A stretch of 64,000 bases of DNA from contig NC_047024.1 of the NCBI RefSeq assembly GCF_902652985.1, positions 36,456,001-36,520,000 on the forward strand, read 5' to 3'. Both the position numbers and the translations under genes were made by a program. Positions within the stretch are counted from its first letter, which is position 1. The number at the start of each line of letters is the position of its first letter. Below are positions 8,962 through 61,187 of this stretch, piece after piece. Below the pieces are notes generated by a model. It worked only from the letters and a program-made list of their open reading frames with translations. It did not search any database and had not been told where the DNA came from. The stretch is from Pecten maximus. Its lineage: Eukaryota.

Positions 8962-9700
8962 TGGGTCTATGGGGTATAAGACTGATGGTAGACCGTGAAG
9001 GAGTTTCTGTTTGGGTCTATGGGGTTGAAGACTGATGGTAGACTGAGAAGGGGTGTCTGGTTCTGTGGGGTTGAAGACTGATGGTAGACTGAGGAGGGGT
9101 ATCTGGGTCTGTGGGGTTGAAGACTGATGGTAGACTGTGGAGGGGTGTCTGGGTCTGTGGGGTTGAAGACTGATGGTAGACTGTGGAGGGGTATCTGGGT
9201 CTGTGGGGTTGAAGACTGATGGTAGACTGAGAAGGGGTATCTGGGTCTGTGGGGTTGAAGACTGATGGTAGACTGTGGAGGGGTGTCTGGGTCTGTGGGG
9301 TTGAAGACTGATGGTAGACTGTGGAGGGGTGTCTGGGTCTGTGGGGTTGAAGACTGATGGTAGACTGAGGAGGGGTGTCTGGGTCTGTGGGGTATAAGAC
9401 TGATGGTAGACTGGGGAGGGGTATCTGGGTCTGTGGGGTTGAAGACTGATAGTAGACTGTGGAGGGGTGTCTGGGTCTGTGGGGTTGAAGACTGATGGTA
9501 GACTGAGGAGGGGTGTCTGGGTCTGTGGGGTTGAAGACTGATGGTAGACTGTGGAGGGGTGTCTGGGTCTGTGGGGTTGAAGACTGATGGTAGACTGTGG
9601 AGGGGTCTCTGGGTCTGTGGGGTTGAAGACTGATGGTAGACTGTGGAGGGGTATCTGGGTCTGTGGGGTTGAAGACTGGTGCTAGACTGAGGAGGGGTCT
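8962..9700. repeat. 46-bp G-rich minisatellite, ~16 copies
   Basis: Unit ctgggtctgtggggttgaagactgatggtagactgtggaggggtgt recurs with period 46 (e.g. 9241, 9287). Confidence 0.95.
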
Positions 9701-19200: not shown

Positions 19201-20378
19201 TGGTGAGGACGAGGAGTTATAGTAACATGGTGGTGAGGACGGGGAGTTATAGTAACATGATGGTGAGGACGGGGAGTTATAGTAACATGGTGGTGAGGAC
19301 GGGGTGTTATAGTAACATGATGGTGAGGACGGGGAGTTATAGTAACGTGATGGTGAGGACGGGGAGTTATAGTAACATGGTGGTGAGGACGGGGTGTTAT
19401 AGTAACATGATGGTGAGGACGGGGAGTTATAGTAACATGATGGTGAGGACAGGGAGTTATAGTAACATGGTGGTGAGGACGGGGAGTTATAGTAACGTGA
19501 TGGTGAGGACGGGGAGTTATAGTAACATGATGGTGAGGACGGGGAGTTATAGTAACATGGTGGTGAGGACGGGGTGTTATAGTAACATGGTGGTGAGGAC
19601 GGGGAGTTATAGTAACATGGTGGTGAGGACAGGGAGTTATAGTAACATGATGGTGAGGACGGGGAGTTATAGTAACATGATGGTGAGGACGGGGAGTTAT
19701 AGTAACATGATGGTGAGGACGGGGAGTTATAGTAACATGATGGTGAGGACGGGGAGTTATAGTAACGTGATGATGAGGACGGGGTGTTATAGTAACATGG
19801 TGGTGAGGACGGGGAGTTATAGTAACATGGTGGTGAGGACGAGGAGTTATAGTAACGTGATGGTGAGGACGGGGAGTTATAGTAACATGATGGTGAGGAC
19901 GGGGAGTTATAGTAACGTGATGGTGAGGACGGGGAGTTATAGTAACATGGTGGTGAGGACGGGGAGTTATAGTAACATGGTGGTGAGGACGAGGAGTTAT
20001 AGTAACGTGATGGTGAGGACGGGGAGTTATAGTAACATGATGGTGAGGACGAGGAGTTATAGTAACGTGATGGTGAGGAAGGGGAGTTATAGTAACATGA
20101 TGGTGAGGACGGGGAGTTATAGTAACGTGATGGTGAGGAAGGGGAGTTATAGTAACGTGGTGGTGAGGACGGGGAGTTATAGTAACATGGTGGTGAGGAC
20201 GAGGAGTTATAGTAACGTGATGGTGAGGACGGGGTGTTATAGTAACATGGTGGTGAGGACGGGGAGTTATAGTAACATGATGGTGAGGACGGGGAGTTAT
20301 AGTAACATGATGGTGAGGACGGGGAGTTATAGTAACGTGATGGTGAGGAAGGGGAGTTATAGTAACGTAATGGTGGGG
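16247..20378. repeat. 30-bp minisatellite, ~135-140 copies (~4.1 kb)
   Basis: Unit atggtgaggacggggagttatagtaacatg with a few recurrent variants; source of the MVVRTGSYSN ORFs. Confidence 0.98.
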
Positions 20379-23996: not shown

Positions 23997-25692
23997 ATGG
24001 AAATTGAGCCATTCTCCTTCATCAGAAGTCCTGCAAAAGGTGATTTAGAGACATTTTCGTGCATCAGAAACCAAAGTGATTTGGAGAAGTTTTCCTACAT
24101 ACGAAGCCCTCCAGAAACGTTTTCGATACCTTGTGTGCCTGTGAGATCCGAGCCCAGCCCCTCTCGTCCACCGCAATCTAGTCAGAGATTTTCCACCCCC
24201 AATATGGTGGTGGATCTTCAGTCTCAGAACCCCTGTGTGGTTACTGCAGATCCATCTGTGCAGTCGTCGCCACATGACTACAAGCTTCTTCCCCAGGAAG
24301 TGTCTCCGCGAACTGCATCGCATGACTACAAACTTCTGCAGCAAGACATATCACCCCGTTCTGCGTCACATGACTACAACAAACCATTGTTGACTGACGT
24401 TTCCCCAAGGTCAAATGACTCCTACAAACCATGTCCCCAGGACATTTCCCCAAGGTCAAATTTGAGTGAATGTAACAAACGCCAGCAGCAGCAAGAACAG
24501 TTCTCCCCAAAGGGAGGCTCCCTTGAGTATGAACACAATCGTAACCTATCCCTACGCACTTCTTCTCATGACTACCGTCTTTTGCCACCAGAGGGCATGA
24601 TGACACCAAGTCCTGATAACCCACCCTCCATTGACCACTCTGACATCCCTCAAAATGAAGTATTATCTTTAAAAGGCATGAACACTCCTAAAAATAGCCC
24701 CCCACAGCTGTCTCCGAAACAGCTTGACTTGGACCATGGGCGGTTTGATTGTGGTCCAAAACAAATGGATTATGATAATATGGATCAAAACAGCGGATCA
24801 GACCAATCTCCGTGTCAGACTCCAGAGAAGCATCGGTCCCGGCGTAAGCAAACTATTGAAGACATTGTGCGCCGAATGAAAGGATCAGAAAACGGTTACT
24901 ATAGTGACAGTGAAGAAGAGGAGGAAGATGATGGGGAGGACACTCTGAATGGATCTATTTCCATGGATATGCACAATGGTGACCCAAAACTGGGTGATAG
25001 TATGTGCGGTATGAGGTGTGGGCAGGATGAAGTGGATGGGGCTCCTATGCAGATATCAGGCCTTAAGGCTAGCGACAAAGACAGGCAACCTTGTATTAAC
25101 AATGGGTCCGCAGGCAGTGGAACCATGGGAAACGGTCTGGATGGAATGTCCTATAAAAACGGCAGCATTTCCTTAGATACAGAGAACATCCAACCAGACC
25201 ATATGCGACAAATGGAAAATGGCAAGGACAACAAAGATGGTTGTGAAAATAAAGATATGTCACCTGAACGACAACAGATCAATGCTATCATGGACAAAGT
25301 AGCTGAGATCACAGGAGGGAACAAATCGCAAGACTTCAACACTCCCAAACAGAACGGAAACTGGTTTCACGGAGCATTCAATAGCCTTCCTTTGTTTCCC
25401 TTTCCTCCTAGTCCCTTGGAACATCATCTCAATCCAAACTTTCTTCCGATGTTTGACGGCAAATTTCCTTCGTCACAAGAGGTTGAGAAAGATTATCTCA
25501 AATGTCAATTTTGTGAAAGGACATTCCGACGCCAAAAGAACTTAGAAAACCATATCGAGAACACTCACCACGGGAAGACCACAGCAAGAAGAAAATCATC
25601 AGATAGCAATGACATGTATTTCAAATGTACACATTGCCCCTATACCACCAAGCATCAGAGTAACCTGTACGTCCATCTTCGCATACATACTG
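23997..25692 (+). CDS. C2H2 zinc-finger transcription factor, first coding exon (two C2H2 fingers)
   Basis: Acceptor tttacag| at 23947; long non-repetitive ORF; fingers CQFCERTFRRQKNLENHIENTH and CTHCPYTTKHQSNLYVHLRIH; donor G|GTAAGT after 25692 splits the HTG|ERPY linker. Confidence 0.9.
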
Positions 25693-27866
25693 GTAAGTGC
25701 TTGATAGTACAATGTCTGCCAAGGTCAACCTGTATAAATTACCCTGCATATCATAGGTTACATGTCTTGATGAATTGTGTCTATTCTTTCTTATACACAT
25801 ACAAGAAACATTGTTTTGACTATGTAACACAATGTGCTGTAAAATCAAATTTCTTCAAGGTAACGAAGGCATCGGACTTAAGGCAGAGGTAACTTTTTAA
25901 GCAATATGTAAAAGTGATTTCAACTGATCCATCGATAGAAAAATATTTTGACACAATTAGCATTTACCTTGCTAAAAACAATTAGTTACTAATTTCAGTA
26001 TCCTGATCAAGTTCATTAACCTCGGGGAATAATCAAGCTAATTAATCTTGAGGAAATTTATGTTGATAAAATTGTTTGTGAGTTTCAATGTCCTTGGAAC
26101 TGCTAAAGTAAAAAAAAAATTGTCCAGGGATTACATTAATTACCTTCAGCACCTGTTTTAATGGTTCCAAGTCAAAGATGAGGTTAAAATAAGGTGTGAT
26201 ACAGATACTTCACCAATCTTCAGTCCGTGTGTCCTTATCTAGACTAAATTTTTTCTTTTAAACAGCTGACAGAATTTTGAAAACCTTCAGAAATGTTTTA
26301 ATTCTTCATAAAATAATGAAAAGTTAGTTAGTTAATCTAAAGATTTTTTCCCAAGTGGGTTTACTGGCCAAGGAATTTCCTTTTTTCTTTTGGTTTTCAT
26401 TTTGATCAGTAAAAAGCAGTGTGGTTTGAAATTAATAGTCGTTAAGAATTGGATATGAAACTGAGGCTTCCTGCTATTGGGTCCTCAAGATGATGATTAA
26501 ACATCATTCATAACAGAATTGTTCAAATGACCCAACTCAATATTCACATTTGTTGGTGCAAAAATATTGTATTTTGTTGTAATTTCAAAAAGCTAACCTA
26601 AAATTTCAAAACAGAATACAAATTTATAAAATTAACTAAATTTTAGTGAAAATATTATAGCTTGATTTATATTTGTTGTCAATTCAACTTAAAAAATTGA
26701 TTAACAATTTTAAATTCATTTAAATCGTCATATATGTCAGTTTCTAGAAAATAAATTAGAAAACTTAAATTGTGTATGGATTGAATGGGAAAAACTTGTC
26801 TGTTTTATGAAACTTGTGGAACTCTGCAGAAGTCTGATCACATGTTTCTGATTACGTAAGATTGCAGGAATTTAATGGTGGCAAAAACTACCCATGTTTA
26901 ACCGGTATTGTTTTCATTCTATTATTCTGTAACATATTGATCCTCGTATGATCACTGTTCGTACAAGTCTAAGGAAAGATAACTCTTGCATGTTACATCT
27001 CTGGGCTTATTATTCAGTAATTACACTGGTCTGAAATTCAATCGAAGGAAATGTGACAGACTTTAATTGCTCTTGAGTTTGGAAGATTGCCAAGCCGGTT
27101 TTTCTCAAACTCTGCAGCTACTCTAAAACATTTTAATTACAGTGGTGCATTTCTCAGTGTTTGATAAAAGTTGTGTTTAGTGATGGAGGTTTTGGGGTGG
27201 ATTGATATTCACAACCATAGTTTTGTGTCATTTGATTGAAATGCAGATGTTGAAATATGGTTGTTTCACTTGTTAGACAAGCTAAGACACCCTCTATAAG
27301 TAAAGTAATTAAACAGCTTGCAGTGTTTGATGTCACGGAGATTGATCATGTGACTAAGAAACAGACCCTAACTAAAAGCCAAGAATCCATCACCCCTGCT
27401 AACCCTAATGTTCTCGGTGCTCCTCTGCCGGGTTTGTGTGCAGAGAAACTATTGTTTGTAGGTTCAACAATGGAACTACAGCGGATTGCAGCCTTGCGGA
27501 ATTGTTTTTACACCACTGCTGCAGTGCCTGAAAACGCAGTGTGCATCACTTGCAGGTTTTCATTAAAACATGTCAATTTTAAGTTGGCTTCTTTAGACCT
27601 CTGTATCTCCTGATAGTTAATTTGCACTTACGAAGCTTGTGCTTCCTGAACAACAGAGTACCCTTAAAATGTCCATGGAGAGATTGAGTCAGGTATTTGA
27701 CTGTCGCTTCCTTCTTCTGTGAACTGTTATTTCCCATCAGAGCCTCCAGATAGTACAGTTGAATGTGCCAATACACAGATGACATAATTGTTTTGTAAGG
27801 TGTTGTATTTTCCAGCATGTTTGTTTCCTTGATTAAATGGTGTGGGACTTGTACCTTAAGGTGTTA

Positions 27867-42874: not shown

Positions 42875-43885
42875 TTATGCAGATTTCACAAAACTTTTGA
42901 CGAATCCATTTACATACAGGTATCTTACAAACAGCAGAATGAACACTACAAAACAAGTTTTCTTGAAGAGTTGGATCCAGCCGTCGTAAAGCCCCTCCAT
43001 TTCCCCATCGCCTGACCTTCTCGTTTTCATCGGGAAATAGGTATGCTCTTTCACTGTCTCAATGGCGCGCTTTGCGCCCTTCCATGCGCCGGGACCATTG
43101 AGGCGCCACTGTGTAGGCGTAGCTGGACCGAAGTATATCTTGTACCACAGTTTTGGGTCAGAGAAGAAGTATTTCAATAAATCTGGTTTACATCCGATCA
43201 TTGAAGCCAGTCTGTCCATGTACTGGATTGAGTAAATCTGCAGGCTGTATCTTGGAGAGTCGATGAAGTTACGTGTGATGAAAGCCTTACGTTTCTCCAC
43301 GAGTTCGAGTCGTTGAGAGGCACTGGGTAGCTCACATTTCCCGCTAAATACTCTTGTTATACACCTGGCTTGCATTTCTAATATCGGTGGCAGCGCACCA
43401 AACGGTTGAACCAAGCCAACAACACCAAGTGTGCACGGGTTTAAATTTGTAGGAAACACAAGCTCGTACAAGTATGGAAAATGGCCGTCAACTTTGATTA
43501 TGTCATCGTCTAGAATTGGAAAGTCGAAATTGAACCCAGTTGCCAGGATGACGACATCAATGTTCTTCAGTTCTGTACCATCTTCAAATTTGGCGCCGTC
43601 GGTTGTGAACTCCTTCACGTTACACTTGATGTTGATGGTACCGAGTAAGATCCTGTTGGGAAGGTCGTCACTTATTGTCAGGGCACTTGCGTCAAAGCGT
43701 TTGTTCGGTGAGAGGCCATAGTTGGCATGGTTGTAGCGTCGGTTTAGGCGATGGAAGAACATTGGCCGCATAAGAGTCCATGGTAGTTTCATGGAAAACC
43801 GGTTGAGGGCGAGATGGTCAAAAGGAACGCCGTGGTCAGCTGCTCTCTGGATCACATAGGTCCCGCGCCGACTGGACATGTAAAC
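42875..43885 (-). CDS. FMO: Flavin-containing monooxygenase (dimethylaniline monooxygenase family), coding exon 2
   Basis: Acceptor cag| before 43885; VYMSSRRG, VILATGF (FATGY-type motif), EMQAR, FGPATPTQWRLNGPG; hydrophobic C-terminal membrane anchor; TAA stop. Confidence 0.95.
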   Translation of the reverse strand, partial: VYMSSRRGTYVIQRAADHGVPFDHLALNRFSMKLPWTLMRPMFFHRLNRRYNHANYGLSPNKRFDASALTISDDLPNRILLGTINIKCNVKEFTTDGAKFEDGTELKNIDVVILATGFNFDFPILDDDIIKVDGHFPYLYELVFPTNLNPCTLGVVGLVQPFGALPPILEMQARCITRVFSGKCELPSASQRLELVEKRKAFITRNFIDSPRYSLQIYSIQYMDRLASMIGCKPDLLKYFFSDPKLWYKIYFGPATPTQWRLNGPGAWKGAKRAIETVKEHTYFPMKTRRSGDGEMEGLYDGWIQLFKKTCFVVFILLFVRYLYVNGFVKSFVKSA

Positions 43886-44088
43886 CTGCATAGAAAGTCA
43901 ACAGCAGAAAATTAATGGAACACTGACAAGTCGATGAAAGTAACCATGGAGACACGAGAATCATAATCATACGCGTGATGATTTTATAGAAAATACTATT
44001 TCTGATTATAACTGATAAACTGAATTTGTAGTACTCCCTTTATTTATTTCTGCATTAATTATCACAAAGGGAACCAGTTCCTAAGTAT

Positions 44089-44923
44089 CAGTCTAAGGCC
44101 GGTAAAACCATATACAGAGCCAGTGTAAGGCCGGGATAACCATATACAGAGCCAGTCTGAGGCCGGGATAACCATATACAGGGCCAGTCTGAGGCCGGGA
44201 TAACCATATACAGAGCCAGTCTGAGACCGGGATAACCATATACAGGGCCAGTCTGAGACCGGGATAACCATATACAGAGCCAGTCTGAGACCGGTAAAAC
44301 CATATACAGAGCCAGTCTGAGACCGGGATAACCATATACAGGGCCAGTCTGAGACCGGTAAAACCATATACAGAGCCAGTCTGAGGCCGGGATAACCATA
44401 TACAGAGCCAGTCTGAGACCGGTATAACCATATACAGGGCCAGTCTGAGGCCGGGATAACCATATACAGAGCCAGTCTGAGACCGTTAAAACCATATACA
44501 GGGCCAGTCTGAGGCCGGGATAACCATATACAGAGCCAGTCTGAGACCGTTAAAACCATATACAGGGCCAGTCTGAGACCGGTAAAACCATATACAGAGC
44601 CAGTCTGAGGCCGGGATAACCATATACAGGGCCAGTCTGAGGCCGGGATAACCATATAAAGGGCCAGTCTGGGGCCGGGATAACCATATACAGGGCCAGT
44701 CTGAGGCCGGGATAACCATATACAGAGCCAGTCTGAGACCGGTAAAACCATATACAGAGCCAGTCTGAGACCGGTAAAACCATATACAGAGCCAGTCTGA
44801 GGCCTGTAAAACCATATACAGAGCCAGTCTGAGGCCGGTAAAACCATATACAGAGCCAGTCTGAGACCGGTAAAACCATATACAGAGCCAGTCTGAGGCC
44901 GGGATAACCATATACAGGGCCAG
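44089..44923. repeat. 32-bp minisatellite, ~26 copies, filling most of the FMO intron
   Basis: ccatatacag at 44108, 44140 and 44172; unit ccagtctgaggccgggataaccatatacagag. Confidence 0.97.
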
Positions 44924-44929
44924 ACTTAC

Positions 44930-45556
44930 GTGTTCGGCATGACGACTCAGTTCGCAGGCAACGTCCGATCCCGAATTACCAATCCCCACCACCAGGATTC
45001 TCTTCCCTTCGAACCCCCGGAAGTCCTTGTAGTCGTGGGTGTGCATGACCTTGCCCTTGAACTTGTCCAGTCCGGCCATTGTTGGCATGTGTGGTATATG
45101 AAGGTGTCCATTACACACAATAACATAATTCGTCCTCAATTTTCGCGACTTTCCCGATTCTAAATTCTTGACTACCGTTACCCAGCTTCCAGTCTTGTCG
45201 AAGTCGTCAGCTTTCTTAACGTTATCTACACTATGGCTGAAGTTGATATGCTTTCTCAAATTGAAGTTGTCTGCGTAAAGTTGGAGGTATTTTTTGAAGT
45301 GTTTGTGCCCCATAAAGTTTGGGAACTCCTTTGGGATTGGAAAGTCACTGTAACACGTCATCTCCTTACTGGTGTTGATACTACAGGAGTTGTATAGGCT
45401 TGGGTCGCCATCTTTTGACCACTTATGATAATTCCACAGTCCACCGACGTCCGTATCCTTCTCGAAGCATATTGGTTCCATTCCTTCGTCCAGACAGTGC
45501 TTGACCGCCGCCAATCCGGAAACTCCGGCCCCTACCACCAGCACAGTCTTAGTCAT
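44930..45556 (-). CDS. FMO: Flavin-containing monooxygenase, coding exon 1 (209 codons; full protein 545 aa)
   Basis: FAD motif GAGVSG, GGLWNY, FMO signature FKGKVMHTHDYK, NADPH motif GIGNSG; donor CAC|GTAAGT at 44929; acceptor ttctccctag| immediately before the ATG implies an upstream non-coding exon. Confidence 0.95.
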
Positions 45557-47785
45557 CTAGGGAGAACAAACCACGTGTGTTAAGTAATCTGGAAGGTTTA
45601 CCTAATGTTTAAGTTATGTCAAGCATAGCCAAGCTTACAGACACTCACATTTTATATGAGATTTAGGAAACGAGCCTACGATCTTTTTGTCATCTCCTAG
45701 CAACCATCTTACGAACTAAAAATTAAAAAAATTAACGATGACTTTCCTCAATCCCTCGTGAAATGGAAACGACGGAAACAAATATAAGATTCTGTTGATG
45801 ATGTAGCGATTTGTTGCTAAATTAAAATGTTTGTCCACAGAGCTGCGTCTTTATATCAACTTTAAACGCCAGATCTATATCATAATATTTATACTGGTTC
45901 ATATTGATGTAAGTTTCATGTAAGATAATATATTTCATTACCGTCAGCGTGTTTGGTTAAAATAAACAACCACTTTTGAAACACCGCTAAAGTGCTCGAG
46001 GTTATGATCATAACTCGCAATGGTCAAACAGCCAATAACATTTACGGTTTAATGAATGTCATTTCTACTTATATATAGTATATATATAATATTATTGAAG
46101 ACCTTACACAACTCAGAGAAGAACTTTGCTTGTAAAAGTAAATTAGTGACACTTAGATTCGCATTGTTTGGTTGCAGTAAGAAAATAATTATTTTCAATT
46201 TGCCATTTATATAGTGTGATTTGTTTCGGATATTCTTCAGAAACCAAGCGAGTAAAAGGATAAAATCAATGGAACACCTCTTTTATAATCTCCAAATGAA
46301 TAAAACACAATGATAGCATCCCGAAATCTACACAAGGCTGAACATTGACAATGGAGTCCAAATATTTTTCGAAAAAAAAACTATGTTATGCTTCCAAATG
46401 AATAGAAAATTAAAAGCATACCTTGAAAGCCCTTTAAGACGGCCAGGATCCAGATGATTACATACAGTATATACCTGTGGCTGTAACACCTGGTCACACC
46501 TGTATAGAGCTTTATCTGTTCACCTATATACACGGGATAAAGGTGATAGCATGGTTATGTAATAGTTTTGTGACTTACAATAAATTGGAGGATAGTGTGT
46601 TAATATACCGTCTAAATACCAATACAAAGTTCACGACCTAGACAAAAGGCCGTACTGTAAATACTATTGATGCTGTAGACTGACTATGTTCCTGTTAAGT
46701 TATAGACAGATATAACCGGCATACTCCCCAACAACCTGGTACGAAAAGGAATAGAAAGCAGAACTTTGGTCGACGTCCCCACGGGTGTGTCGTTGAAGGC
46801 TGGGAAGAGGCTGTTGCATTGAGCCTGGCGGGAGTTGTCACGTTGGCGCCACCACAACTGCGATAACGCGTTATGGCCGAAATCAGCCACCATAGGTTCA
46901 GTACGCAGTGTTGTGATAATTGTTGTCCACTGATATAGATATCAATGTCCAATCCATGTGTTTCGTAAGTGTCCGGATATAAAACAAGGGGTCAAGGTGG
47001 TGACTTTAGTTGGTCAATTGTTTTGAAGATGAGAAAGTAGGTTAATTAAGCATCCACAAACGTACAGCTTTACACTTACAGACAAGTCTTTATAGTCTTT
47101 AATAACATATTCATACTCACGGGACTATTCCTTATCATTGGTGTTACAGTTTACGTTCCGGATGATTTGTATGTGCATTGTGTTAAGTAACTAATATTGA
47201 GTACGGTCAGTGCATGTCTTTTACATTGATTTCAATACGTTTCCCCAGTATTACATAGTAATTAATATTACTTTATCACGTTGCGAAATCGAAAGATATG
47301 GTCGGTGTTGAGGTTTCACAATTCACAGAGCAAAACTGTCAAGATTGAAATTTCGATCAAACAGAAAAAACAGAGCCCAAGATATGATTTGTATCTTGTT
47401 AATATATCATCGAATTGGGACAACTTCTCAACACTGTTTACTTAAGAACTTAGCAAACGTGGTCTGATGGTTAAAACAACGAATGAAGGTCGTTCATGGA
47501 TATTCATATCTAACCAATATCAGTAAAACCCTTGACCTCATCTTGTTTCATTTGGAAGCAAAAGCATTGACGGTTTATACCGTCCTATAATAACATACAG
47601 GGCAGCTAACACTATCTTACCAGACCAGAAGTTTGTTTTAATCCCAATAATCATGATATATAGATCTCAGTTAGATGTCTACCTGGCTGGAAAATAAAAG
47701 CTCTTTTGTACAACACAGTAAAATCAATAGAGGGCATCACCAGAGTGTATTTATTAGGGTATTCGTAGTTAAAAGAAACATTTGT

Positions 47786-48988
47786 TCAAATATCGCGTTG
47801 AATGATATAATATTGAAATATCCCGGTTCTGTCGGTGGAGACACCTACCGACTGAATTAAACTAAAGTTCGACAACCTCCTGAAATTGGACGAGGATAGC
47901 AGAACAGGCGTATGACCAAAAACGATTATGAATCCTTTCTCTCGGACTGTAGGCAGTATCGCGGTCAAAAGAACCTCCGCGTCAGCGGAAGTGACGACTT
48001 CTGAGTTCAGAAAGCGGATGAAGCAAGCATCAGCAGTTCCGGTAAGTATTTTAGGAAACAAGGCGTTTTCACAGTACACTTCATCGACCCGTTCTCTGGA
48101 AAAGTCGGCCATTTGTTGACTTAAATCCTGGCCTATTGTGTAACTTTCCGGAAATGCTTCCTTCAGTGTGGACAAAAACACCCCTGTGGAACAAGCTGGA
48201 TCATAGAACCTTCCAGCTGACATGTCTATAGTTTCCAGGAATTGAATAGTGTATTGTCGGAGACGCTCTTCTCCACAACTTAACATGGTATCGTACACGT
48301 TATCAACTGCCCACCCTTCCGCGGGGGAACAAAGCTCCTTCCTGTCGGGTTCTCTAAGGAGCGGGAATGGACAACGTATTTCTACGCTGGAAGAATCTCC
48401 TGCCATGATATCAGAAAAAAGCTTGAGTTTCTCGGAGTTCGTTAACGGGAAATAGGTGATTTGTACTTCATTCTCTGTGACGCGTTCATCACAAAACAGA
48501 CCTAGGACCATATCGGCAGTCACCAAGCTGCAATGGAGTTCAGGTATTTTCCCGGCGATCCAGTAATCGGACAGAATCTTCCTTCCAACTAATCTCCGAA
48601 TGCCAGATAGTCCACCGTATATTCCAACGTCAAGGAAAAATATACTTTGAGGAAAATCACAAAACTTTTCATTAATACGCCTCGTGTCTCTTTCCACGAC
48701 ATTTCCCCACAGAATAATCTTGACTGTAGTTGTACCCGGGGAGATCTTGTTGTCTTCGTACCTTTTGAGTTCGTTTAGGATGAGAGTCAGACATTTCCTG
48801 TCGAATGGTTGGGAGGAAGCCTTACTCAACGTTTCCTGTAGAATGGTCTTCCCGGAATCCCATTCCCCAGACGACAGGAGCTTCCTCGCCATGAGAAAGT
48901 CCTTCCTAATTTCCGGGTCGTGAACATCTTTGAATATACCATCGTAGCTTGTGATGGCGTCCGTTCGGAGATTTGAGTCGTCTGCCAT
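47786..48988 (-). CDS. Class I SAM-dependent transferase, Nat/isonocardicin-synthase-like (putative 3-amino-3-carboxypropyl transferase), intronless CDS, 400 aa
   Basis: SAM motif I YDPACSTG, GQDLSQQM, RFLNSEV, VFGHTPVLL, FQYY; AATAAA (47755-47750) ~30 nt after the stop. The SAM fold is well supported; the Nat assignment comes from recalled motifs, not a search. Confidence 0.8.
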   Translation of the reverse strand: MADDSNLRTDAITSYDGIFKDVHDPEIRKDFLMARKLLSSGEWDSGKTILQETLSKASSQPFDRKCLTLILNELKRYEDNKISPGTTTVKIILWGNVVERDTRRINEKFCDFPQSIFFLDVGIYGGLSGIRRLVGRKILSDYWIAGKIPELHCSLVTADMVLGLFCDERVTENEVQITYFPLTNSEKLKLFSDIMAGDSSSVEIRCPFPLLREPDRKELCSPAEGWAVDNVYDTMLSCGEERLRQYTIQFLETIDMSAGRFYDPACSTGVFLSTLKEAFPESYTIGQDLSQQMADFSRERVDEVYCENALFPKILTGTADACFIRFLNSEVVTSADAEVLLTAILPTVREKGFIIVFGHTPVLLSSSNFRRLSNFSLIQSVGVSTDRTGIFQYYIIQRDI

Positions 48989-49361
48989 GTTGAATGTTAG
49001 TTAAATTATGTGTCAGTATTGTAGGTACTCTGAGCACAATAAGAGTGTGTGGTGCTGCTATCTGTTGACCACCAGGAACATTCCCACACATTACCGTCTA
49101 TAGACACGCCTTACGTAGCCGTTATCACAGTCTGTGGTATAAATGTACTAAATGTGTTTAAAAAATAAATAAACGGGATATTTTGACACTCATCTGGATA
49201 TTTTTGTCACATCTGTCTAATTATAGATTACTATATAATATCGATAAGATCTCAGCTGTTTTGAATCCACTAGATTCTAACATTTTATGGACCCTACCAT
49301 ATGAGCTTATGGACACGAGTGTGATTTTTATTCGTGACATATACGGTATATAAGAGTTTAA

Positions 49362-49478
49362 AACAGCCTCGCAGTAACCTCAGATAATCTATAGTCTATT
49401 TGGTGTATGGTTATGTCAATAACAGCCTCGCAGTAACCTCAGATAATCTATAGTCTATTTGGTGTATGGTTATGTCAA
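49362..49478. repeat. Direct tandem duplication, 2 x 59 bp
   Basis: aacagcctcgcagtaacctcagataatc... at 49362 and 49421. Confidence 0.9.
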
Positions 49479-49748
49479 AAGAGGGCGTGTGCTTTTATAA
49501 ACTGTGCCAAAGTGTTATGTAAAACAGATGGTTTCTACTACACAGAATCTTATGACTATTAGATATTCTCATGACAGATTAACTTCCACCAAAATGTTTT
49601 TTACATTAATAGCTATATCGCAACCTTCAAACAAAATGGTGAGTGATTTTGTTTATGATATGTATATTGATGTTGTCATCGTCCGAAAAAAAAACCATTT
49701 TACCTCTGACGGTCATTGAAGTTATCCAATCACCGAGTGCTGCGTAAA

Positions 49749-51140
49749 AAAACACGTGTACGATATTCCTCTCATTAGTCCGGACATACAAAACCACATG
49801 TACGACTCCTCTAATTAGTCCGGACTTACAAAACCACATGTACGATTCCTCTCATTAGTCCGGACTTACAAAACCACATGTACGATTCCTCTCATTAGTC
49901 CGGACTTACAAAACCACACGTACGATTCCTCGAATTAGTCCGGACATACAAAACCACATGTACGTTTCTTCTCATTAGTCTGGACTTACAAAATCACATG
50001 CATGATTCTTCTAATTAGTCCGGACTTACAAATCAACATGTACGTTTCTTCTCATTAGTCTGGACTTACAAAACCACACGTACGATTCCTGTAGTCAGTC
50101 CGGACTTACAAAACCACATGCACGATTCCTCTCATTAGTCCGGACTTACAAAACCACACGTACGATTCCTCGAATTAGTCCGGACATACAAAACCACATG
50201 TACGTTTCTTCTCATTAGTCTGGACTTACAAAATCACATGTATGATTCTTCTAATTAGTCCGGACTTACAAATCAACATGTACGTTTCTTCTCATTAGTC
50301 TGGACTTACAAAACCACACGTACGATTCCTGTAGTCAGTCCGGACTTACAAAACCACATGCACGATTCCTCTCATTAGTCCGGACTTACAAAACCACATG
50401 TACGATTCCTCTCATTAGTCCGGACTTACAAAACCACACGTACGATTCCTCGAATTAGTCCGGACATACAAAACCACATGTACGTTTCTTCTCATTAGTC
50501 TGGACTTACAAAATCACATGTATGATTCTTCTAATTAGTCCGGACTTACAAATCAACATGTACGTTTCTTCTCATTAGTCTGGACTTACAAAACCACACG
50601 TACGATTCCTGTAGTCAGTCCGGACTTACAAAACCACATGCACGATTCCTCTCATTAGTCCGGACTTACAAAACCACATGTACGATTCCTCTCATTAGTC
50701 CGGACTTACAAAACCACATGTACAATTCCTCTCATTAGTCCGGACTTACAAAACCACATGTACGATTCCTCTCATTAGTCTGGACTTACAAAATCAAACG
50801 TACGATTGCTCTCATTAGTCCGGACTTACAAGACCACATGTACGATTCCTCTCATTAGTCCGGACTTACAAAACCACCTGTACGATTCCTCTCATTAGTC
50901 CGGACTTACAAAACCACATGTACGATTCCTCTCATTAGTCCGGACTTACAAAACCACATGTACGATTCCTGTAGTCAGTCCGGACTTACAAAACCACATG
51001 TACGATTCCTCTCATTAGTCCGGGTATACAAAATCAAACGTACGATTCCTCTCATCAGTCCGGACTTACAAAACCACATGCACGATTCCTCTCATTAGTC
51101 CGGACTTACAAAAACACATGTACGATTCCTCTCTAGTTCG
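49749..51140. repeat. 40-bp minisatellite, ~35 copies, with higher-order structure
   Basis: Unit tacgattcctctcattagtccggacttacaaaaccacatg. Confidence 0.97.
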
Positions 51141-51844
51141 TACACACAAAACGTCGTGTATCATTCCTTTTGCCAGTTTGAAAGTACAAACCACATGTAC
51201 GATATTGCTCTTGTCAGTCCAAACGTCCTTTGAATTATACAGCGATACTCATCATTGCTGTGCTCATAAAGTGATGTCCCCCTTTTATCACTGGTTGTAG
51301 TCCATCTGAACAGGTTTTATTGAAAAGCATTGTAGAGTACATTGTGTCTGTATTATGATAAGGTGGCCTGCATCTGTTACATCTATTGGAGTATCGATAT
51401 GATAATAAACCAGTTTTTGGTAAGTTACAGCTGTAGATTCCGTTAAAATGTTATATTACTTTGTACGCCAATCATTGATTAAAATATCTCGTGATAGGTT
51501 TTTTGATATACATGTACATGTATAGGTTGTATAGGTCATTTTAGAAAACACCAAACAGAATCCATTACCTGTGTTTAAGTATGGCCAATTCATTTACCCA
51601 GAGCAGTATGATGGCATGACTTCAGGAAGTGCTCGTCAGCAACGGTAACCGCTTAGAGGGACGTTTAGTGGAAACGACATAGAGGTTTGATCAGAGGTCC
51701 TGATGTATTTTGAAAATATATTAGAGTTCAATTCGTGGATTGAAGAATGATCTACATGTATGTGGGTATTACTGAGTACTTTGTGGAACTAGGCTGAGTG
51801 TGGACGCCATCTTGTGTTTGAAGGATTAAAAAATGGAGGTTTGA

Positions 51845-54800
51845 TTTTTTTTTTATTTAAACATATTTCATTTGTATCAATATATACAAGAGGATTGGGC
51901 ACAAGTTTTCAAACTTATATGAAGCCCTTTCCTAATTATCATGATTTTTTACAATTTTTATACAAGATGACATGACATTTGAAATATTAACAATTATATT
52001 TGGGGAGAAAGAGAGAGAGAGAGGGAGAGACTGAGAGAGAGAGAGAGAAACAGAGAGACAGAGAGACAGAGAGAGAGGTATTACGATTCGAATTTATTCA
52101 AATATTCAATTGATAAATTTAGTTTAATTATTTACTAAGCAAACAAACAAATCCGATTTCGATAGCAGAAGATTAAACTGTTCGCTGCACAAAAACACAC
52201 TGCTATTTCTAATGTTCGTTATATCCTGTTCCATGGTAAGCTTTCTCCGTTCGATCCATTGCCTTCTGGAAAAAATATTCGTTTCTCTTGCGCTATCGGA
52301 ATCGGAAGAGACTTTATAAATACATTTTTTTTAACTGTCAATATATATATGTATGTATAATATTTCACAATACTGATTAAGAAAAGAGAAAACGGGGAAT
52401 TAAAATCTTCTTGAGTCAAGAATGTATTTCTGAGTGATTTGGCTTATCATAAAATTATCTTCAATGGATAAATCATTGTTTCCATATAATAATAGTTGCA
52501 GGTCTAGTGGCATGAAATTGTTTAGATTTCGGAACAATTCGATTCTCTGTTCAAAGTAATTTTGACAAATAAAGAAGTAGTGGTATGCATCCTCAATAGG
52601 ATGTCCACACTGACAATGGCGATAATCAATAAGATGTGATTGGAAAAGGTCATTTTTTAGAATACTACATTTGTTTCTTAATCGCGCATGCAATATATTA
52701 GATTTTCTATTTCCAACTGAGTAATGGGTAGGTACTTGTGTTCTATTTGAGATCGATTTTTTAAATACTGAATATGAAATACTATGTCTAATCTCTAGAT
52801 CTGAAGTCTGAAATTCGGTAGAGAGTAATTATTTGCATCACGTAGGTTATAATGTGAGTTTTCAGATACCAAGGGAGGTAATAAAGTGGATAAGTAATTA
52901 GGAGTGAGTTGGTTAGTAATTTTATAGAATAGTTGTAGTTTTCTTCTAGAACGACGATTTACAAGAGGTTCTAATCCACTTTCAGAGTATAATGAGAGCC
53001 TGCTAGCAAAGGAAGGTGATCCGGTAATTATTCTTGCAATTTCTAAATTTAATTTTTCCAAATTATCTGCATCACTGAGAGAATATCCATCCCAAACCTC
53101 GCAACAATATTCAAATAAAGGCAGAATATATGACTTGTAAATTTTATACAGAGTTTGTCTATTTAAGATATATTTGAGCTTTCTGAGAATACTTACTTGT
53201 TTAGATACATTTTTGCATATGCTTTCAATGTGTCGAGACCATTTACAGTTTACATCTAATGTTACGCCTAGGTGTTTGTGGTGATCAACAAATTCTACAT
53301 CTATATTATTAAATCTAATGTCTATAACATGTTCATGTTCATTTTTTGAAATTAGTAAGGCTTCCGTTTTCAGAGGGTTAAATTTCACCAACCAGGTTTC
53401 TGCCCAATTTTGAATTTTTGCTAAGTCATTATTTATTTTAATTTCAATTTCAAATGGTGATCGACCAGAACATAATAAAGAGGTATCATCAGCAAATAAT
53501 TTTGAAAGACTATCGAGATTATCAGATATGTCGTTTATGTAAAGAATAAAAAGTAGTGGGCCCAATACAGATCCTTGTGGCACGCCAGCATTAGTAGTCC
53601 TAACGGAAGATTTACTGTTTCCTACAAAAAACATGCTGTTTCCTGTTACTTACATAATTTTTTAACCAAATTAGAAGTTTCCCATTAATTCCATAATTCG
53701 CTAACTTTACATACAGTCGCTTATGCCACACACGATCGAACGCTTTGGAGATATCACAAAATACTAGACAGGTTGGTTGATTTTTTTCCAAATTTTCACA
53801 TAAGGTATTGTAAATTTCTATCATTTGATGGACGGTAGAATGACCAGATTGGAAACGAGATTGGTATTTATAAATAAGTGAGTTTTCAAGCAAATAGTTA
53901 TTCAAATATTTAACTACTAAACGTTCAAAAACTTTACCGATAGTGCTTAGTAATGAAATAGGCCTATAATTAGAAGAAACGTGTTTATCCCCTTTTTTTG
54001 AATAATGGCATAACTATTGCTAATTTCCAGTGTTCCGGGAAAATACCAGTATCAAGAGAGTATCTAAATATTAATGATAATGGGTAGGCTATAGAAAATG
54101 CTGTATTTTTTAACATATTGTGGCTAATTCCGTCGTGACCTACAGCTTTGTAAAGAGATAAAGATTTAAGTATGTCGGCAATGTCGCTGAGTTGAAAATG
54201 TATGTCTGATATCGTAGCGTCAGTCCTTAGTTCGACCTCTGGCTCGTCAATGTCTGTATCGTCAATGGTAGAAATGGAAACAAAGTAATCATTAAGTATA
54301 TTGGCTTTATCGACGTCTGTCATTACAAGATTTCCGTTTGTATGTACAAGCGGTGGTATAATATTAGCAGTGTCAGAAGTTTTTATTAATCTCCGAACAA
54401 TTTTCCAAAAATTACGTGGATTTGAAGAAGAATAACGATCTAGAATACCATTTATATCCGCATAGAAAAGTTCTTAGTATGTTTTTTAAGATTGTTGACA
54501 TGGTTACGTTGTTTCCGAAAATTCGTCAAATTTTTTACAGAGCGATTTGATTTAAAAACTTTTAAAAGTCTGTCTCTTTTCCTAATTTCTCGGCGAAGGT
54601 CAGAATTAAACCAGGACTTGTCGTTAGGTCTAATTATAACAGTTTTAGTAGGTATGCACTCACTGGCTATGTCCAAATATTTATCAGTAAATTTTTTACA
54701 CATTTCGTCTGGGGAGTGCGTCATAGAGAACAAGTCAACCCAGTCCGTATCGTCTAGTTTGTTATTAAACAGTTCATAATTTGCTTCATTATAACATCTT

Positions 54801-58284: not shown

Positions 58285-61187
58285 CCATAGTCCAGGTTCT
58301 CTAATTCCTGTAGTAGTTTTATGCCTTGGAGATGCCAATTCTGGTAATATGGCTTTAAAGTAAAAACTTTTCAGTTTTGGCAGCATTGTATTGGTCCATA
58401 ATTGTTTGTCGACGTAAATCCTTTCCACGTGAAGTTGGTATGGATTTGTCGAGTGTACAACAAAATCTACCAAAGAGTAGTTTGCTATATTCATTTGTCC
58501 CTGTATCTGGTAGTAGTAGTTGTGGTTTTCTTTTAAGGTAAGTTTTGAATTCACAGTCTCTAAGCAAAATGACTTCATTTCCTTACTTGCTTCATTTAGA
58601 TTTATTGGCTTTTGATGAAGCAAGTTTTTGATCTCAATCAATCCAGTCTCACCATTTTTCTCTGTAACTTTTCCATCTGGACTGGTTGCTAAATATGGGT
58701 GTTCCTTACTGATTACTAACCCTACTGGTTCATGGGTTACAATTTTGTTATGGCTTGTTTTCATGTAATTCTTGTATTCCAATATGGTAATTCCTTCTTC
58801 TCGAATTCCGCGTCTGGTGTAACAATTACTAAATGGTTGCCCATGAACAAGCCTTTCCACAGCTTTAGTAACCGGTTTAGTGGGGTCTTTCTTCGTAATC
58901 AAACCGAAGTTGGACGATGTGATCCTTTTACTTCGTTCGGATTTCCAGACTTGTGATTCTGATTGCGATTTGGTTTCTTTCTCAATAAGAGCTATCTGTT
59001 GGACCGGCAAATCTACATGTTTCTGGAAATAATCCGTACACTTATTGTGAAGTTCTTTTTGCGTAATATCGGATACACATTCAAGGACATCTGGTCCATA
59101 ATCTCTTTTGGCCCTTTTTGATGACGATTGCTTGCCATTTTCTTTTTTATCTCTTTGCTTTATTTTCTGTTTTTTCTTTGGATCTTTTAGTTGAATTCAA
59201 AGCATTCTCCCTACTTTGGTACACTCTTTTGAAGTGGTTTCCTGGTTTGGAGGTTGTGCACTTTTCCCATACAATAGGAGACCACTGTGGACCGAAGTTT
59301 TTCCTTAAACACCCTCCAAAACATCTGGTATTCCATGATCCCATATTACATCTTTTGACGTATTTTCCACCATCAAACTTCGCTCGAATGGACATGAAGG
59401 ATTCCGCAAGGTTGGTACTGAAATTTCCTATCAGTTGACTACTCTTGGCAGCTATCCTGGCAAGCAGACGAGAAATGTCATGCAACATTAATTTGTCAAG
59501 GAATGATGAATAGGGCACGTCACCACGCGACTCTTCCTCTGCTTCCAAGGATGTAGTGTCATGCCATATATATGACAGCTCCTGCAAAATGTTGGTAGTT
59601 TCCAATACATCAGATGGTGATGAAGATGAATTTGAAGATGGAGATGGAGATAAAGGTGCAGCTGAAGTTGAAGGCGAATTTGAAGGCGCAGTTGAAGATG
59701 AAGGCGCGGTTGAAGTAGAAGACGTAGAAGTAAGACATGAAGTTGGATTTTTGGACTTACAAAAATCAGTACAATTTGAGTGATCCCCAAAGATATGGTG
59801 TACTGAATTAATAATGTCATGCTTCAATAGCTTCACTTTCTGATTGTGGCTCATTGTATTGTCATTTGACCTTAGTCTGATGGCACATCTGACTGAACTT
59901 GTAAGACGAACTCTCACACGTTTTGTCAGTTTGTCTTTCCCTTTGTATTGGGGGTTTTCATCAACCAGTTTTTTCAAGATTTGAACGCAGACATTTACAG
60001 ATATGATTAGCACATTCTAATTTAGTAATGTCTCTACCCCAAACCGGCACATTTTCTTGAAGTTTTTGAAAAACAGAACTATCACCATCTGCTATTACCT
60101 TGGTGTATCTGACCCCATGCAAGCTTTCAGCTTTCATAAAACCTTCCAGAATCATATCAGACTCCATGGCTTGTGAGGATTCAGTCCAATTTCTGAAACA
60201 CCGATGAGGTTTTGGAACGGTATTGGATGTGGATGCCATACTGCAAATAGAACAATGCTTGTTCCTAACACCTAAATACAACAGTTTACCGGTCTCTGCC
60301 CCAATTATAACGGCACAACCTCCCATAGCATTGTATGTGTGCTTATGTGTCCTTTTACTCCACCCGCCATCACATATGACAGTAATGCACGGTATCCCAT
60401 TGCTATAACGGCCCTTTTCCATCGCAATCCGCCTTTCTTCTGCTCCGGCCTCTAACAAGTCTTGGGTGGCCACATTCTGCCACATATCTCCAATTTCTTG
60501 CTCAAGTTTACTGAAAGTCTTCTGTGTCATTCCTGGACTATCAAGGGTACCCATCATCTCATTGAGCCTAGACAAACCTCCACCAGTTGCCATGTTGGCC
60601 CACACAGCTCTCATATTAATGTCATAATGGTGACTGGTTGGGGTGTGTAACACGGGGCTAGTTTTGAAATCAAATTTCTTTTTACATCCCTGACATTCCA
60701 CCAATATTTGGCTTGCAAGACCAAATGTAGCAATCTCTTTGACTAAACGAATGGGAGATACATCTTGGGATACTAATCTGCCAGCTTCTTGGCATAGAAC
60801 AGTGTGTTTTGTGATGTCAGCAATGTGAGTTTGCAACATTTGCAAATTGATGAGTCTATATCCTTCATTTGCAACATTAGAAACTCTGGTAAATTTGAAC
60901 TTCAAACTACTCTCACATGATGTCCGGGTTAATTTGTACAAGTCAGACTGACAGTTAGATGTAAACAACAGTGTTCTATTTCTGTGTGGTGTAACATTTT
61001 TGGCTATTTTGTATTTACGCAGAATTCTTTTTCTGAACACCTTCAATATGACTGATAAATTTGATTTGGTATTGACTTTCACTTTGTATGTTTGCTTTCG
61101 TAAACCATATAAAACCTTCCTTTGTGCACCCTTGGATCCTCCTGGAAGTCCAAATCTTTTCTTTTTTGATATTGACTTGTTAGCCAT
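58285..61187 (-). pseudogene. DDE transposase (Kolobok/'Mutator-like' type) fused to a YqaJ/lambda-exonuclease domain; disrupted by two frameshifts and a stop
   Basis: VICDGGWSKR, HCSIC..HRCFRNW, IADGDSS, KLECANH, TNLAES (DDE triad); DYGP linker; RITSSNFG, PYLATSPDG, LIEIK, YYYQIQGQM (YqaJ PD-(D/E)XK); ORFs 59961-61187, 59147-60013 and 58177-59010 lie in three frames; donor TGG|GTAGGT at 58284. Confidence 0.9.

What the first reader, a model, noticed from the sequence alone, without database searches (positions are those of the whole stretch)
47786..48988. Bacterial-type Nat/isonocardicin-synthase-like SAM enzyme embedded in an animal genome
Seen: an intact, intronless 400-aa ORF with a eukaryotic AATAAA ~30 nt after the stop. 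It is flanked by a spliced animal gene and animal repeats, so it is not a contaminant contig. The motif set E-x-x-C-P, GW, DPACSTG, RFLNSEV, FGHTPVL and FQYY matches my recollection of Nat from the Nocardia nocardicin A pathway. Known: Nat transfers the 3-amino-3-carboxypropyl group, not the methyl group, of SAM to a phenolic oxygen. About 100 extra N-terminal residues precede the homologous region. Inference: a horizontally acquired, domesticated small-molecule-tailoring enzyme.
Basis: partly seen in the sequence, partly recalled or inferred. Interest (0 to 1): 0.8.

Follow-up and report, generated by a model that had tools for sequence, protein, structure and literature searches.

The report
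Scallop bursatellin-pathway aminocarboxypropyl transferase gene
This is a real, expressed scallop gene of bacterial ancestry that most likely moves the amino-acid side chain of SAM onto a tyrosine-derived phenol. The enzyme family and its mollusc pathway were already published and assayed in 2025, so the find is correct but largely known.

Summary
Window 47786-48988 (-) is an intact, intronless 400-aa ORF in Pecten maximus. It is transcribed and polyadenylated (AATAAA at 47755-47750, tail at about 47731).

It is a true homologue of isonocardicin synthase NAT (PDB 8zhu, E 9e-39; the predicted model matches with TM 0.89).

It is not new. It is the scallop member of the mollusc aminocarboxypropyltransferase (ACT) of the bursatellin-oxazinin (bur-ox) pathway. 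A mussel orthologue was assayed in 2025 (Venugopalan & Schmidt, PMC11869996), and that paper already proposed an ancient bacterial origin.

- The window copy belongs to a pectinid duplicate of an ACT->FMO pair.
- The core cluster (FmtATR NRPS, P450, ACT, FMO) lies on another chromosome (C3). Its ACT copy is frameshifted as assembled.
- A third, deeply diverged paralogue lies on C2.
- The N-terminal helical extension also occurs in rotifer and some bacterial homologues.
- A bdelloid rotifer carries NRPS-P450-ACT in the same order and orientation.
- Many bacterial relatives sit in A-T-R NRPS -> ACT -> beta-hydroxylase operons.

The parts
47786..48988 (-). ACT coding sequence: 400 codons plus stop, single exon. 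NAT-type aminocarboxypropyltransferase.
   Evidence: ORF. PDB 8zhu at E 9e-39. Fold match TM 0.89. One 1245-nt RNA-Seq contig is colinear over 47777-49021.
48989..49110 (-). Minimum 5' UTR, unspliced. A TTTATA-like element at 49143-49138 lies about 30 nt upstream of the furthest contig end. Its role as a promoter element is inference only.
   Evidence: Contig of run X9 covers 48752-49110 with no joint. Sequence read.
47731..47785 (-). 3' UTR with AATAAA at 47755-47750 and the cleavage/poly(A) site at about 47731. An 8-bp indel polymorphism at 47752 leaves an AATAAA intact.
   Evidence: The loose end of 23 T before 47731 in run X10, and the 8-letter deletion in three runs, are. Sequence.
44930..45556 (-). 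FMO coding exon 1 (residues 1-209, FAD/NADPH-binding part), ending at a GTAAGT donor.
   Evidence: Pfam FMO-like E 5e-79, profile positions 2-211. Splice site. 83% identical to the C3 cluster FMO exon 1.
43886..44929 (-). FMO intron (phase 0, GT...AG).
   Evidence: Donor and acceptor read.
42875..43885 (-). FMO coding exon 2 (336 codons plus stop) with a C-terminal hydrophobic tail.
   Evidence: Pfam FMO-like E 1.6e-88, profile positions 208-529. 75% identical to the C3 cluster FMO exon 2. That is the closest of all FMO-like sequences in the genome; the next are 43% or less.

Best explanation
The ORF is the Pecten maximus copy of the mollusc aminocarboxypropyltransferase (ACT) of the bursatellin-oxazinin (bur-ox) pathway. 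It is a class-I methyltransferase-fold enzyme of the NAT/isonocardicin-synthase family.

It binds SAM and, instead of the methyl group, transfers the 3-amino-3-carboxypropyl group to the phenolic oxygen of an N-acyl-tyrosinol. This releases methylthioadenosine and yields an O-homoserine ether.

The co-oriented FMO 2.2 kb downstream is the pathway-specific flavin monooxygenase. It is proposed in the literature to oxidise that side chain towards the nitrile.

The window holds a duplicated ACT->FMO module that arose within scallops. It sits on a different chromosome from the core cluster (NRPS FmtATR, P450, second ACT, second FMO on C3).

What is shown here: homology, fold, expression, purifying selection, synteny and the duplication history. 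What is inferred from the assayed mussel orthologue: the substrate and the chemistry.
For: Homology and fold:
- Homology to NAT and a fold match to NAT crystal structures holding a thioadenosine or SAH plus nocardicin G.
- The family motifs are conserved, including D263, A265, C266, G269, D288, R325, F326 and N328, which are invariant over 99 homologues.

Orthology:
- The gene falls inside the bivalve ACT clade, which also holds a sequence whose 90% cluster includes a Crassostrea virginica protein.
- Its Mizuhopecten orthologue has the same ACT->FMO arrangement.
- Its paralogue on C3 lies between a P450 and an FMO, 26 kb from a 1666-aa Fmt-A-T-R NRPS.
- The matching Mizuhopecten copy shares a contig with the NRPS and a P450.

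Literature: the ACT function was assayed for the Mytilus californianus enzyme and the cluster was described (PMC11869996).

Expression: RNA contigs from four studies (one of them a declared RNA-Seq library, the others guessed to be RNA), with a poly(A) tail.

Selection: dN/dS is 0.13 against Mizuhopecten. Six of eight transcript variants are synonymous.
Against: - No enzyme assay exists for this protein.
- This copy is not next to the NRPS or the P450; tblastn with the cluster P450 finds nothing in the window. It could therefore serve another substrate.
- Identity to the assayed mussel enzyme was not measured, because no named Mytilus ACT sequence was returned. Other bivalve orthologues are 50-58% identical.
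- The residues that decide aminocarboxypropyl versus methyl transfer could not be cited, because the NAT structure paper is not in the held library.
Confidence: 0.82

Rival explanations
1. The duplicated ACT->FMO pair on C10 has taken on a new role. It would still transfer the aminocarboxypropyl group, but to a phenol or other nucleophile that is not the product of the C3 NRPS, making a different metabolite.
For: - The pair is unlinked from the NRPS and P450.
- Both duplicates are kept intact in Mizuhopecten.
- The mussel ACT accepts several N-acyl tyrosinols (PMC11869996).
- The two ACT copies are about 75% identical at the protein level.
Against: - In P. maximus the in-cluster copy is frameshifted as assembled. 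That leaves the window copy as the only intact clade-A ACT, which fits replacement rather than a new role.
- Family-invariant residues are unchanged.
- dN/dS is equally low in both copies.
Confidence: 0.13
2. It is an ordinary SAM-dependent methyltransferase that only resembles NAT.
For: Pfam reports only weak Methyltransf_25 and Methyltransf_12 hits. NCBIfam gives weak UbiE- and BioC-like hits.
Against: - Those hits are below the curated cut-offs.
- The match to NAT is about 37 orders of magnitude better than to any methyltransferase of known structure.
- The NAT match covers the extra N-terminal beta-rich subdomain as well.
- The mussel orthologue transfers aminocarboxypropyl, not methyl.
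Confidence: 0.03
3. It is bacterial contamination or a recent, non-functional insertion.
For: The ORF is intronless and has bacterial relatives.
Against: - It lies at 36.5 Mb of a chromosome-scale contig with no N in the window.
- It has spliced animal neighbours.
- The mRNA is polyadenylated and uses a eukaryotic signal.
- Orthologues with the same neighbour exist in an independent scallop assembly.
- Bacterial relatives are only 30-40% identical.
Confidence: 0.01

Closest known systems
McalACT and the other mollusc ACTs of the bur-ox (bursatellin-oxazinin) cluster (Venugopalan & Schmidt, J Am Chem Soc 2025, PMC11869996)
   Same: - Same protein family and same mollusc clade.
- About 400 aa, intronless, with the same N-terminal extension.
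- Adjacent to a bur-ox-type FMO.
- A paralogue sits in a cluster with the Fmt-A-T-R NRPS and a P450.
   Different: - This copy is a scallop-specific duplicate on another chromosome, without the NRPS or P450 nearby.
- Duplicates, the deep second paralogue and rotifer homologues are not mentioned in the paper's main text. Its supplement was not available.
- This copy has not been assayed.
NAT / isonocardicin synthase of Nocardia uniformis (PDB 8zhu, 8zhv)
   Same: - Same fold: TM 0.89 normalised to NAT, 32-34% identity over about 305 columns.
- Shared motifs DxACSTG, GQDLS, R-x-LN, GHTPVL and FQ-x-Y.
- Both perform O-alkylation of a phenol with the aminocarboxypropyl group of SAM. For NAT this is taken from the literature as cited in PMC11869996.
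   Different: - The scallop protein has an extra three-helix N-terminal segment, residues 25-80.
- The presumed substrate is a small tyrosinol, not a peptide beta-lactam.
- It is an animal nuclear gene with a poly(A) signal.
Bacterial A-T-R NRPS -> ACT-homologue -> CmlA-like beta-hydroxylase operons (Streptomyces, Kutzneria, Burkholderia, Xenorhabdus, Rickettsiella and others)
   Same: They pair the same two enzyme types (adenylation-thiolation-reductase NRPS and ACT), together with a beta-hydroxylating enzyme. These bacterial ACTs share a 94-supported (SH-aLRT) group with the animal clade.
   Different: - The hydroxylase is a diiron CmlA-type enzyme rather than a P450.
- There is no FMO.
- The ACT usually lacks the long N-terminal extension.

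Membership tests
NAT/isonocardicin-synthase-type aminocarboxypropyltransferases | Significant sequence homology to NAT across the whole catalytic region | tested here: met
   phmmer gives E 9e-39, query 104-398 against chain 39-325. The next PDB hit is at E 0.36.
NAT/isonocardicin-synthase-type aminocarboxypropyltransferases | NAT fold: a Rossmann-like SAM domain plus an N-terminal beta-rich subdomain | tested here: met
   AF2 model with pLDDT 94.2 and pTM 0.92. Foldseek against 8zhu/8zhv gives E 4.5e-30 and TM 0.89 normalised to the target. Other methyltransferases score E 3.5e-08 or worse.
NAT/isonocardicin-synthase-type aminocarboxypropyltransferases | Family-conserved motifs around the SAM site (DPACSTG, GQDLS, RFLNSE, GHTPVL, FQYY) | tested here: met
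   All are present. D263, A265, C266, G269, G286, D288, R325, F326 and N328 are invariant in 99 homologues.
NAT/isonocardicin-synthase-type aminocarboxypropyltransferases | Transfers aminocarboxypropyl (methylthioadenosine released) rather than methyl | not testable with these tools
   Shown in vitro only for the Mytilus californianus orthologue (PMC11869996).
Mollusc bur-ox ACT | Falls within the mollusc ACT clade that holds bivalve and abalone sequences | tested here: met
   The mollusc clade has 96-97 SH-aLRT support. The window gene lies in the bivalve/Haliotis subclade and pairs with Argopecten at 99. A clade member's 90% cluster includes a Crassostrea virginica 'isonocardicin synthase-like' protein.
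Mollusc bur-ox ACT | Adjacent to a bur-ox-type FMO | tested here: met
   The FMO lies 2.2 kb downstream on the same strand. It is 75-83% identical to the C3 cluster FMO, while all other FMOs in the genome are 43% or less. The same arrangement occurs in Mizuhopecten and in another bivalve.
Mollusc bur-ox ACT | Clustered with the Fmt-A-T-R NRPS and the bacteria-like P450 | tested here: not met
   Neither is in the window. Both lie on C3 beside the paralogous ACT copy. The paper itself describes 'partial/full machinery' in different species, so linkage is not strictly defining.
Mollusc bur-ox ACT | O-aminocarboxypropylates N-formyl-tyrosinol | not testable with these tools
   Needs an enzyme assay.

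The most novel reading that the evidence does not exclude
The bacteria-like core of the pathway (A-T-R NRPS plus ACT, perhaps with the P450) entered animals as one block from a bacterial operon of the type A-T-R NRPS -> ACT -> beta-hydroxylase. Bdelloid rotifers and molluscs carry descendants of the same acquisition, or of two acquisitions from close donors.

Support comes from Rotaria socialis, which has NRPS(-), P450(-), ACT(+) within 8 kb in the same order and orientation as the scallop C3 cluster.

Within scallops, the ACT->FMO half was later copied to another chromosome. In P. maximus that copy has taken over from a decaying in-cluster ACT.
Probability: 0.4. Interest if true: 0.55.

Novelty: already known. 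Interest (0 to 1): 0.3.

Why it matters
The central claim is that an animal genome holds a domesticated bacterial Nat-like enzyme which transfers the aminocarboxypropyl group of SAM. That claim is correct, and animal-encoded natural-product pathways are rare. However, it was published with biochemistry in 2025, so this finding mainly confirms that the scan can recover such genes from raw sequence.

The residual value lies in evolutionary detail that is absent from the paper's main text:
- A relocated ACT-FMO duplicate in scallops.
- A possibly decaying in-cluster copy.
- A second ancient mollusc paralogue. It is the only kind returned here for Patella, which may explain why limpets were reported to have an 'ACT' but no NRPS.
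- A homologous three-gene cluster in a bdelloid rotifer.
- Bacterial operons that look like the source.

Together these make the question of block transfer of a biosynthetic cluster into animals testable.

Tried and rejected
- **Family scans.** Pfam and NCBIfam scans of the ORF gave only sub-threshold generic methyltransferase hits. They did not identify the family.
- **5'-UTR intron.** RNA contigs cross the proposed acceptor near 49030 without a joint. Contigs cannot exclude rare isoforms.
- **Odd joint.** One joint, 47111->48649 in run X1, has non-canonical CA..TT ends and only 21 letters on one side. I treated it as a chimeric contig.
- **NRPS or P450 in the window.** None was found.
- **Neighbours of the C2 paralogue.** ORFs within about 35 kb either side gave no Pfam hit.
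- **Naming unnamed homologues.** Cluster look-ups gave almost no organism names. Identity to the assayed Mytilus ACT was therefore not measured.
- **Exact sequence look-up.** The exact window protein is not in the 15-billion-protein collection. I cannot tell whether that is by design.
- **Missing literature.** The paper's supplement is not held, and the NAT structure paper is not in the library. Published gene lists and catalytic residues could not be checked.
- **Rotifer NRPS.** It is not among the 120 best matches of the scallop NRPS, where bacterial NRPSs score higher. The NRPS alone therefore does not support a shared rotifer-mollusc origin.
- **Spliced FMO.** It was searched exon by exon by reference.
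- **Not run.** Complex prediction and the search of protein representatives were not needed.

Full report
**1. The observation**

The window carries a single uninterrupted ORF at 47786..48988 on the minus strand. It is 400 aa long and starts with ATG.
The exception is 'E-x-x-C-P', which reads E-L-C-S-P in this copy.
- AATAAA lies at 47755-47750, 30 nt after the stop codon.
- The window has no N.
- The window is G000:C10:36456001-36520000 of a 918,306,378-base assembly in 3983 contigs.
- The genome is Pecten maximus. The NRPS found on contig C3 (length 53,454,838) is 100% identical to an NCBI protein named for that species, on a contig of exactly that length.

**2. Transcription**

RNA-type runs labelled with the same species, from four studies, hold 53-64% of the sampled words of 47500-49400. 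Only study P2 is declared RNA-Seq; the other runs are guessed to be RNA. Laid on 46000-51900:
- A declared RNA-Seq run gives one 1245-nt contig colinear with 47777-49021.
- Another run reaches 49110 with no joint.
- One contig ends at 47731 followed by a run of T on the + strand. That is a poly(A) tail 19 nt after the AATAAA.

The mRNA is therefore at least about 1.38 kb, unspliced and polyadenylated at a canonical site.

Eight variants inside the CDS were seen across runs. Six are synonymous, and the two replacements (Q291K, P214S) are at variable positions. An 8-bp indel at 47752 preserves an AATAAA.

**3. What the protein is**

Family scans are uninformative: Pfam and NCBIfam give only sub-threshold generic methyltransferase hits.

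Against PDB sequences the picture is clear. Isonocardicin synthase 8zhu matches at E 9e-39 over residues 104-398, and the next hit is at E 0.36.

An AlphaFold2 model built on 99 homologues has pLDDT 94 and pTM 0.92.
- It matches the NAT crystal structures 8zhu/8zhv at Foldseek E 4.5e-30 and TM 0.89 normalised to NAT.
- The next folds are ordinary methyltransferases at E 3.5e-08 or worse.
- Residues 25-80 form three helices that NAT lacks.
- The region from about 100 to 400 is the NAT-like core.
- D263, A265, C266, G269, G286, D288, R325, F326 and N328 are invariant over the 99 sequences.

**4. It is already known**

A full-text search for 'isonocardicin synthase' returns Venugopalan & Schmidt, J Am Chem Soc 2025 (PMC11869996). 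That paper:
- Describes a mollusc cluster, bur-ox. It comprises a Fmt-A-T-R NRPS, an isonocardicin-synthase homologue named ACT, a bacteria-like P450 and two animal-type FMOs.
- Shows that recombinant Mytilus californianus ACT uses SAM to put an aminocarboxypropyl group on the phenol of N-formyl-L-tyrosinol and analogues.
- States that partial or full machinery occurs in mussels, oysters, clams, scallops, cockles, pen shells and several gastropods.
- Proposes ancient horizontal transfer predating the split of molluscan classes.

NCBI already names the orthologues 'isonocardicin synthase-like'.

**5. Where this copy sits in the family**

The word-index search finds 118 relatives:
- Scallops at 77-88% identity.
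- Other bivalves at 50-62%.
- Haliotis at 51%.
- Patella, Batillaria and Pomacea at 37-39%.
- Rotaria socialis at 38%.
- Bacteria at 32-44%.

In maximum-likelihood trees the molluscs form one group (96-97 SH-aLRT) that splits into two.
- Clade A holds all bivalves plus Haliotis, and includes the window gene.
- Clade B (support 100) holds Patella, Batillaria, Pomacea and a third P. maximus locus on C2. That locus is intact, about 400 aa and 39% identical to the window protein.

[quoted passage not shown] The only Patella sequence returned here is of clade B, which may be the reason. This is inference.

**6. Duplication within scallops and the split cluster**

The genome has three ACT loci.

The C3 region carries the following:
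- A single 1666-aa ORF with Formyl_trans_N, AMP-binding, PP-binding and NAD_binding_4 domains (5622937-5627934, -).
- P450 exons (about 5647860, -).
- An ACT copy (5653909-5655119, +).
- A two-exon FMO (5665069-5667204, +).

This is the canonical bur-ox cluster.

The window on C10 has only ACT followed 2.2 kb downstream by a two-exon FMO, in the same order and orientation.
- The window FMO is 83% (exon 1) and 75% (exon 2) identical to the C3 FMO.
- No other FMO in the genome exceeds 43%.
- tblastn with the cluster P450 finds nothing in the window.

The tree places the window gene with Argopecten, Ylistrum and Mizuhopecten copy a (96). The C3 copy groups with Mizuhopecten copy b (84).

Synteny agrees with the tree:
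- Mizuhopecten copy a is followed by an FMO.
- Copy b is preceded by a P450 and shares its 312,184-base contig with the NRPS.

The ACT->FMO module was therefore duplicated before Pecten and Mizuhopecten diverged.

As assembled, the P. maximus C3 copy has a +1 shift after codon 4, which gives a stop at codon 20 from the conserved ATG. It also has a -1 shift near codon 88.
- Its 304-codon core still shows dN/dS of about 0.10 against Mizuhopecten copy b.
- The damage is therefore either recent or an assembly error. I could not check reads.
- If it is real, the window gene is the only intact clade-A ACT in this species.
- The window gene itself has dN/dS 0.13 against its Mizuhopecten orthologue.

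**7. How it most likely works**

Shown here: NAT fold, conserved SAM-site motifs, expression, selection, and linkage to the pathway FMO.

Inferred from the assayed orthologue: the enzyme binds SAM and an N-acyl-tyrosinol made by the C3 NRPS. The phenolate attacks the gamma-carbon of the methionine part of SAM. The products are methylthioadenosine and an O-homoserine ether.

The neighbouring FMO carries a C-terminal hydrophobic stretch that may be a membrane anchor. The paper predicts that it oxidises the amino-acid end towards the cyanoethyl ether of bursatellin. That step is untested anywhere.

The main rival reading is that the relocated pair works on a different phenol.

**8. Origin**

The N-terminal helical extension is not an animal invention. 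It aligns between both mollusc clades, the rotifer proteins and several longer metagenomic homologues. One of those lies on a 100-kb contig of dense bacterial-type genes.

A scan of one genome per bacterial species finds 101 loci. They come from Streptomyces, Kutzneria, Pseudomonas, Burkholderia, Xenorhabdus, Bacilli and candidate phyla. They also come from many host-associated lineages: Cardinium, Amoebophilaceae, Chlamydiae, Rickettsiella, Legionellaceae and Francisellaceae.

In the tree:
- Rotifers (support 100) are sister to molluscs with moderate support (87).
- Both lie in a 94-supported group with actinobacterial, Legionellales-like and Burkholderia/Xenorhabdus sequences.
- The tree is unrooted.

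**9. Two further observations made in passing**

(a) In Rotaria socialis the ACT homologue lies within 8 kb of a P450 and an A-T-R NRPS-like gene. The arrangement is NRPS(-), P450(-), ACT(+), which is the order and orientation of the scallop C3 cluster.
- The rotifer NRPS aligns colinearly with scallop FmtATR residues 799-1634 (33% identity, E 2e-130).
- However, it is not among the scallop NRPS's best 120 matches.
- With the rotifer P450 as query, the only non-rotifer matches at E 1e-10 or better are mollusc P450s. Three of them share contig lengths with a Crassostrea ACT-cluster member and with the Mya and Haliotis cracherodii NRPS.
- The word index may have missed bacterial P450s at similar distance.

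(b) The 80 bacterial loci were each fetched with 3-kb flanks.
- 29 have an A-T-R NRPS-like gene immediately upstream of the ACT homologue on the same strand.
- 20 have a CmlA-like diiron beta-hydroxylase immediately downstream.
- 6 have an aldo-keto reductase.
- One is an A-T-R-ACT fusion of 1204 aa.

These operons combine the same chemistry as bur-ox, with a different hydroxylase. They make block transfer of NRPS plus ACT plausible. Neither point appears in the main text of PMC11869996 or of the rotifer paper PMC11258130.

**10. Verdict**

The finding is the known ACT of the bur-ox pathway, in a scallop-specific relocated duplicate.

Interest is low to moderate. The residual novelty lies in the duplication history, the second paralogue, the rotifer cluster and the bacterial operons.

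The spliced FMO was searched exon by exon. The joined protein was not built.

Noticed in passing
G000:C3:5622937-5667204 (loci L007, L009-L011): The canonical bur-ox cluster of this genome. It holds a 1666-aa Fmt-A-T-R NRPS in one exon (-), P450 exons (-), a second ACT copy (+) and a two-exon FMO (+). A further P450 fragment with two stops lies at 5671242-5671484.
   Followed up: yes
G000:C3:5653909-5655119 (L004:1485-2684): The in-cluster ACT copy has a +1 shift after codon 4, which gives a stop at codon 20 from the conserved ATG, and a -1 shift near codon 88. The 304-codon core ORF stays open with dN/dS of about 0.1. It is either a recent pseudogene, an N-terminally truncated product, or an assembly error.
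   Followed up: partly
G000:C2:36811858-36813060 (L003:1453-2655): A third, intact ACT paralogue, 39% identical to the window protein. It groups with Patella, Batillaria and Pomacea proteins in a separate ancient mollusc clade. ORFs within about 35 kb gave no Pfam hit. Function unknown.
   Followed up: partly
L105 (Rotaria socialis CAJNYU010001116.1) 1239-9251: A bdelloid rotifer carries an A-T-R NRPS-like gene (-), a P450 (-) and an ACT homologue (+) within 8 kb, in the same order and orientation as the scallop cluster. The closest non-rotifer matches of its P450 are mollusc P450s, three of them on contigs whose lengths match those of bur-ox genes.
   Followed up: partly
L041, L045, L047 and 26 further bacterial loci among L015-L094: Bacterial ACT homologues often sit in operons of the form A-T-R NRPS -> ACT -> CmlA-like beta-hydroxylase (20 loci) or aldo-keto reductase (6 loci). 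One locus is an A-T-R-ACT fusion. They look like a bacterial counterpart of the animal pathway.
   Followed up: partly
P0250: A hemichordate (Glandiceps talaboti) protein of 1017 aa with A-T-R domains is 43% identical to the scallop NRPS. That is closer than any bacterial hit listed.
   Followed up: no
window 16250-20379 and 8958-9703: A 30-bp minisatellite of 137 copies (4.1 kb, strongly G-rich on the + strand) creates long spurious ORFs with chance Pfam hits. There is also a 46-bp repeat of 16 copies.
   Followed up: partly
window 23997-25892, 52795-53634, 59961-61187: A 631-aa ORF with a C2H2 zinc finger, a reverse-transcriptase fragment, and a 408-aa Mutator-like transposase ORF. These are mobile-element content around the gene pair.
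   Followed up: no
window 46422-46886: Low-depth RNA contigs lie between ACT and FMO, with loose ends pointing to lower coordinates. This could be a 5'-UTR exon of the FMO, which would make ACT and FMO separate transcription units.
   Followed up: no
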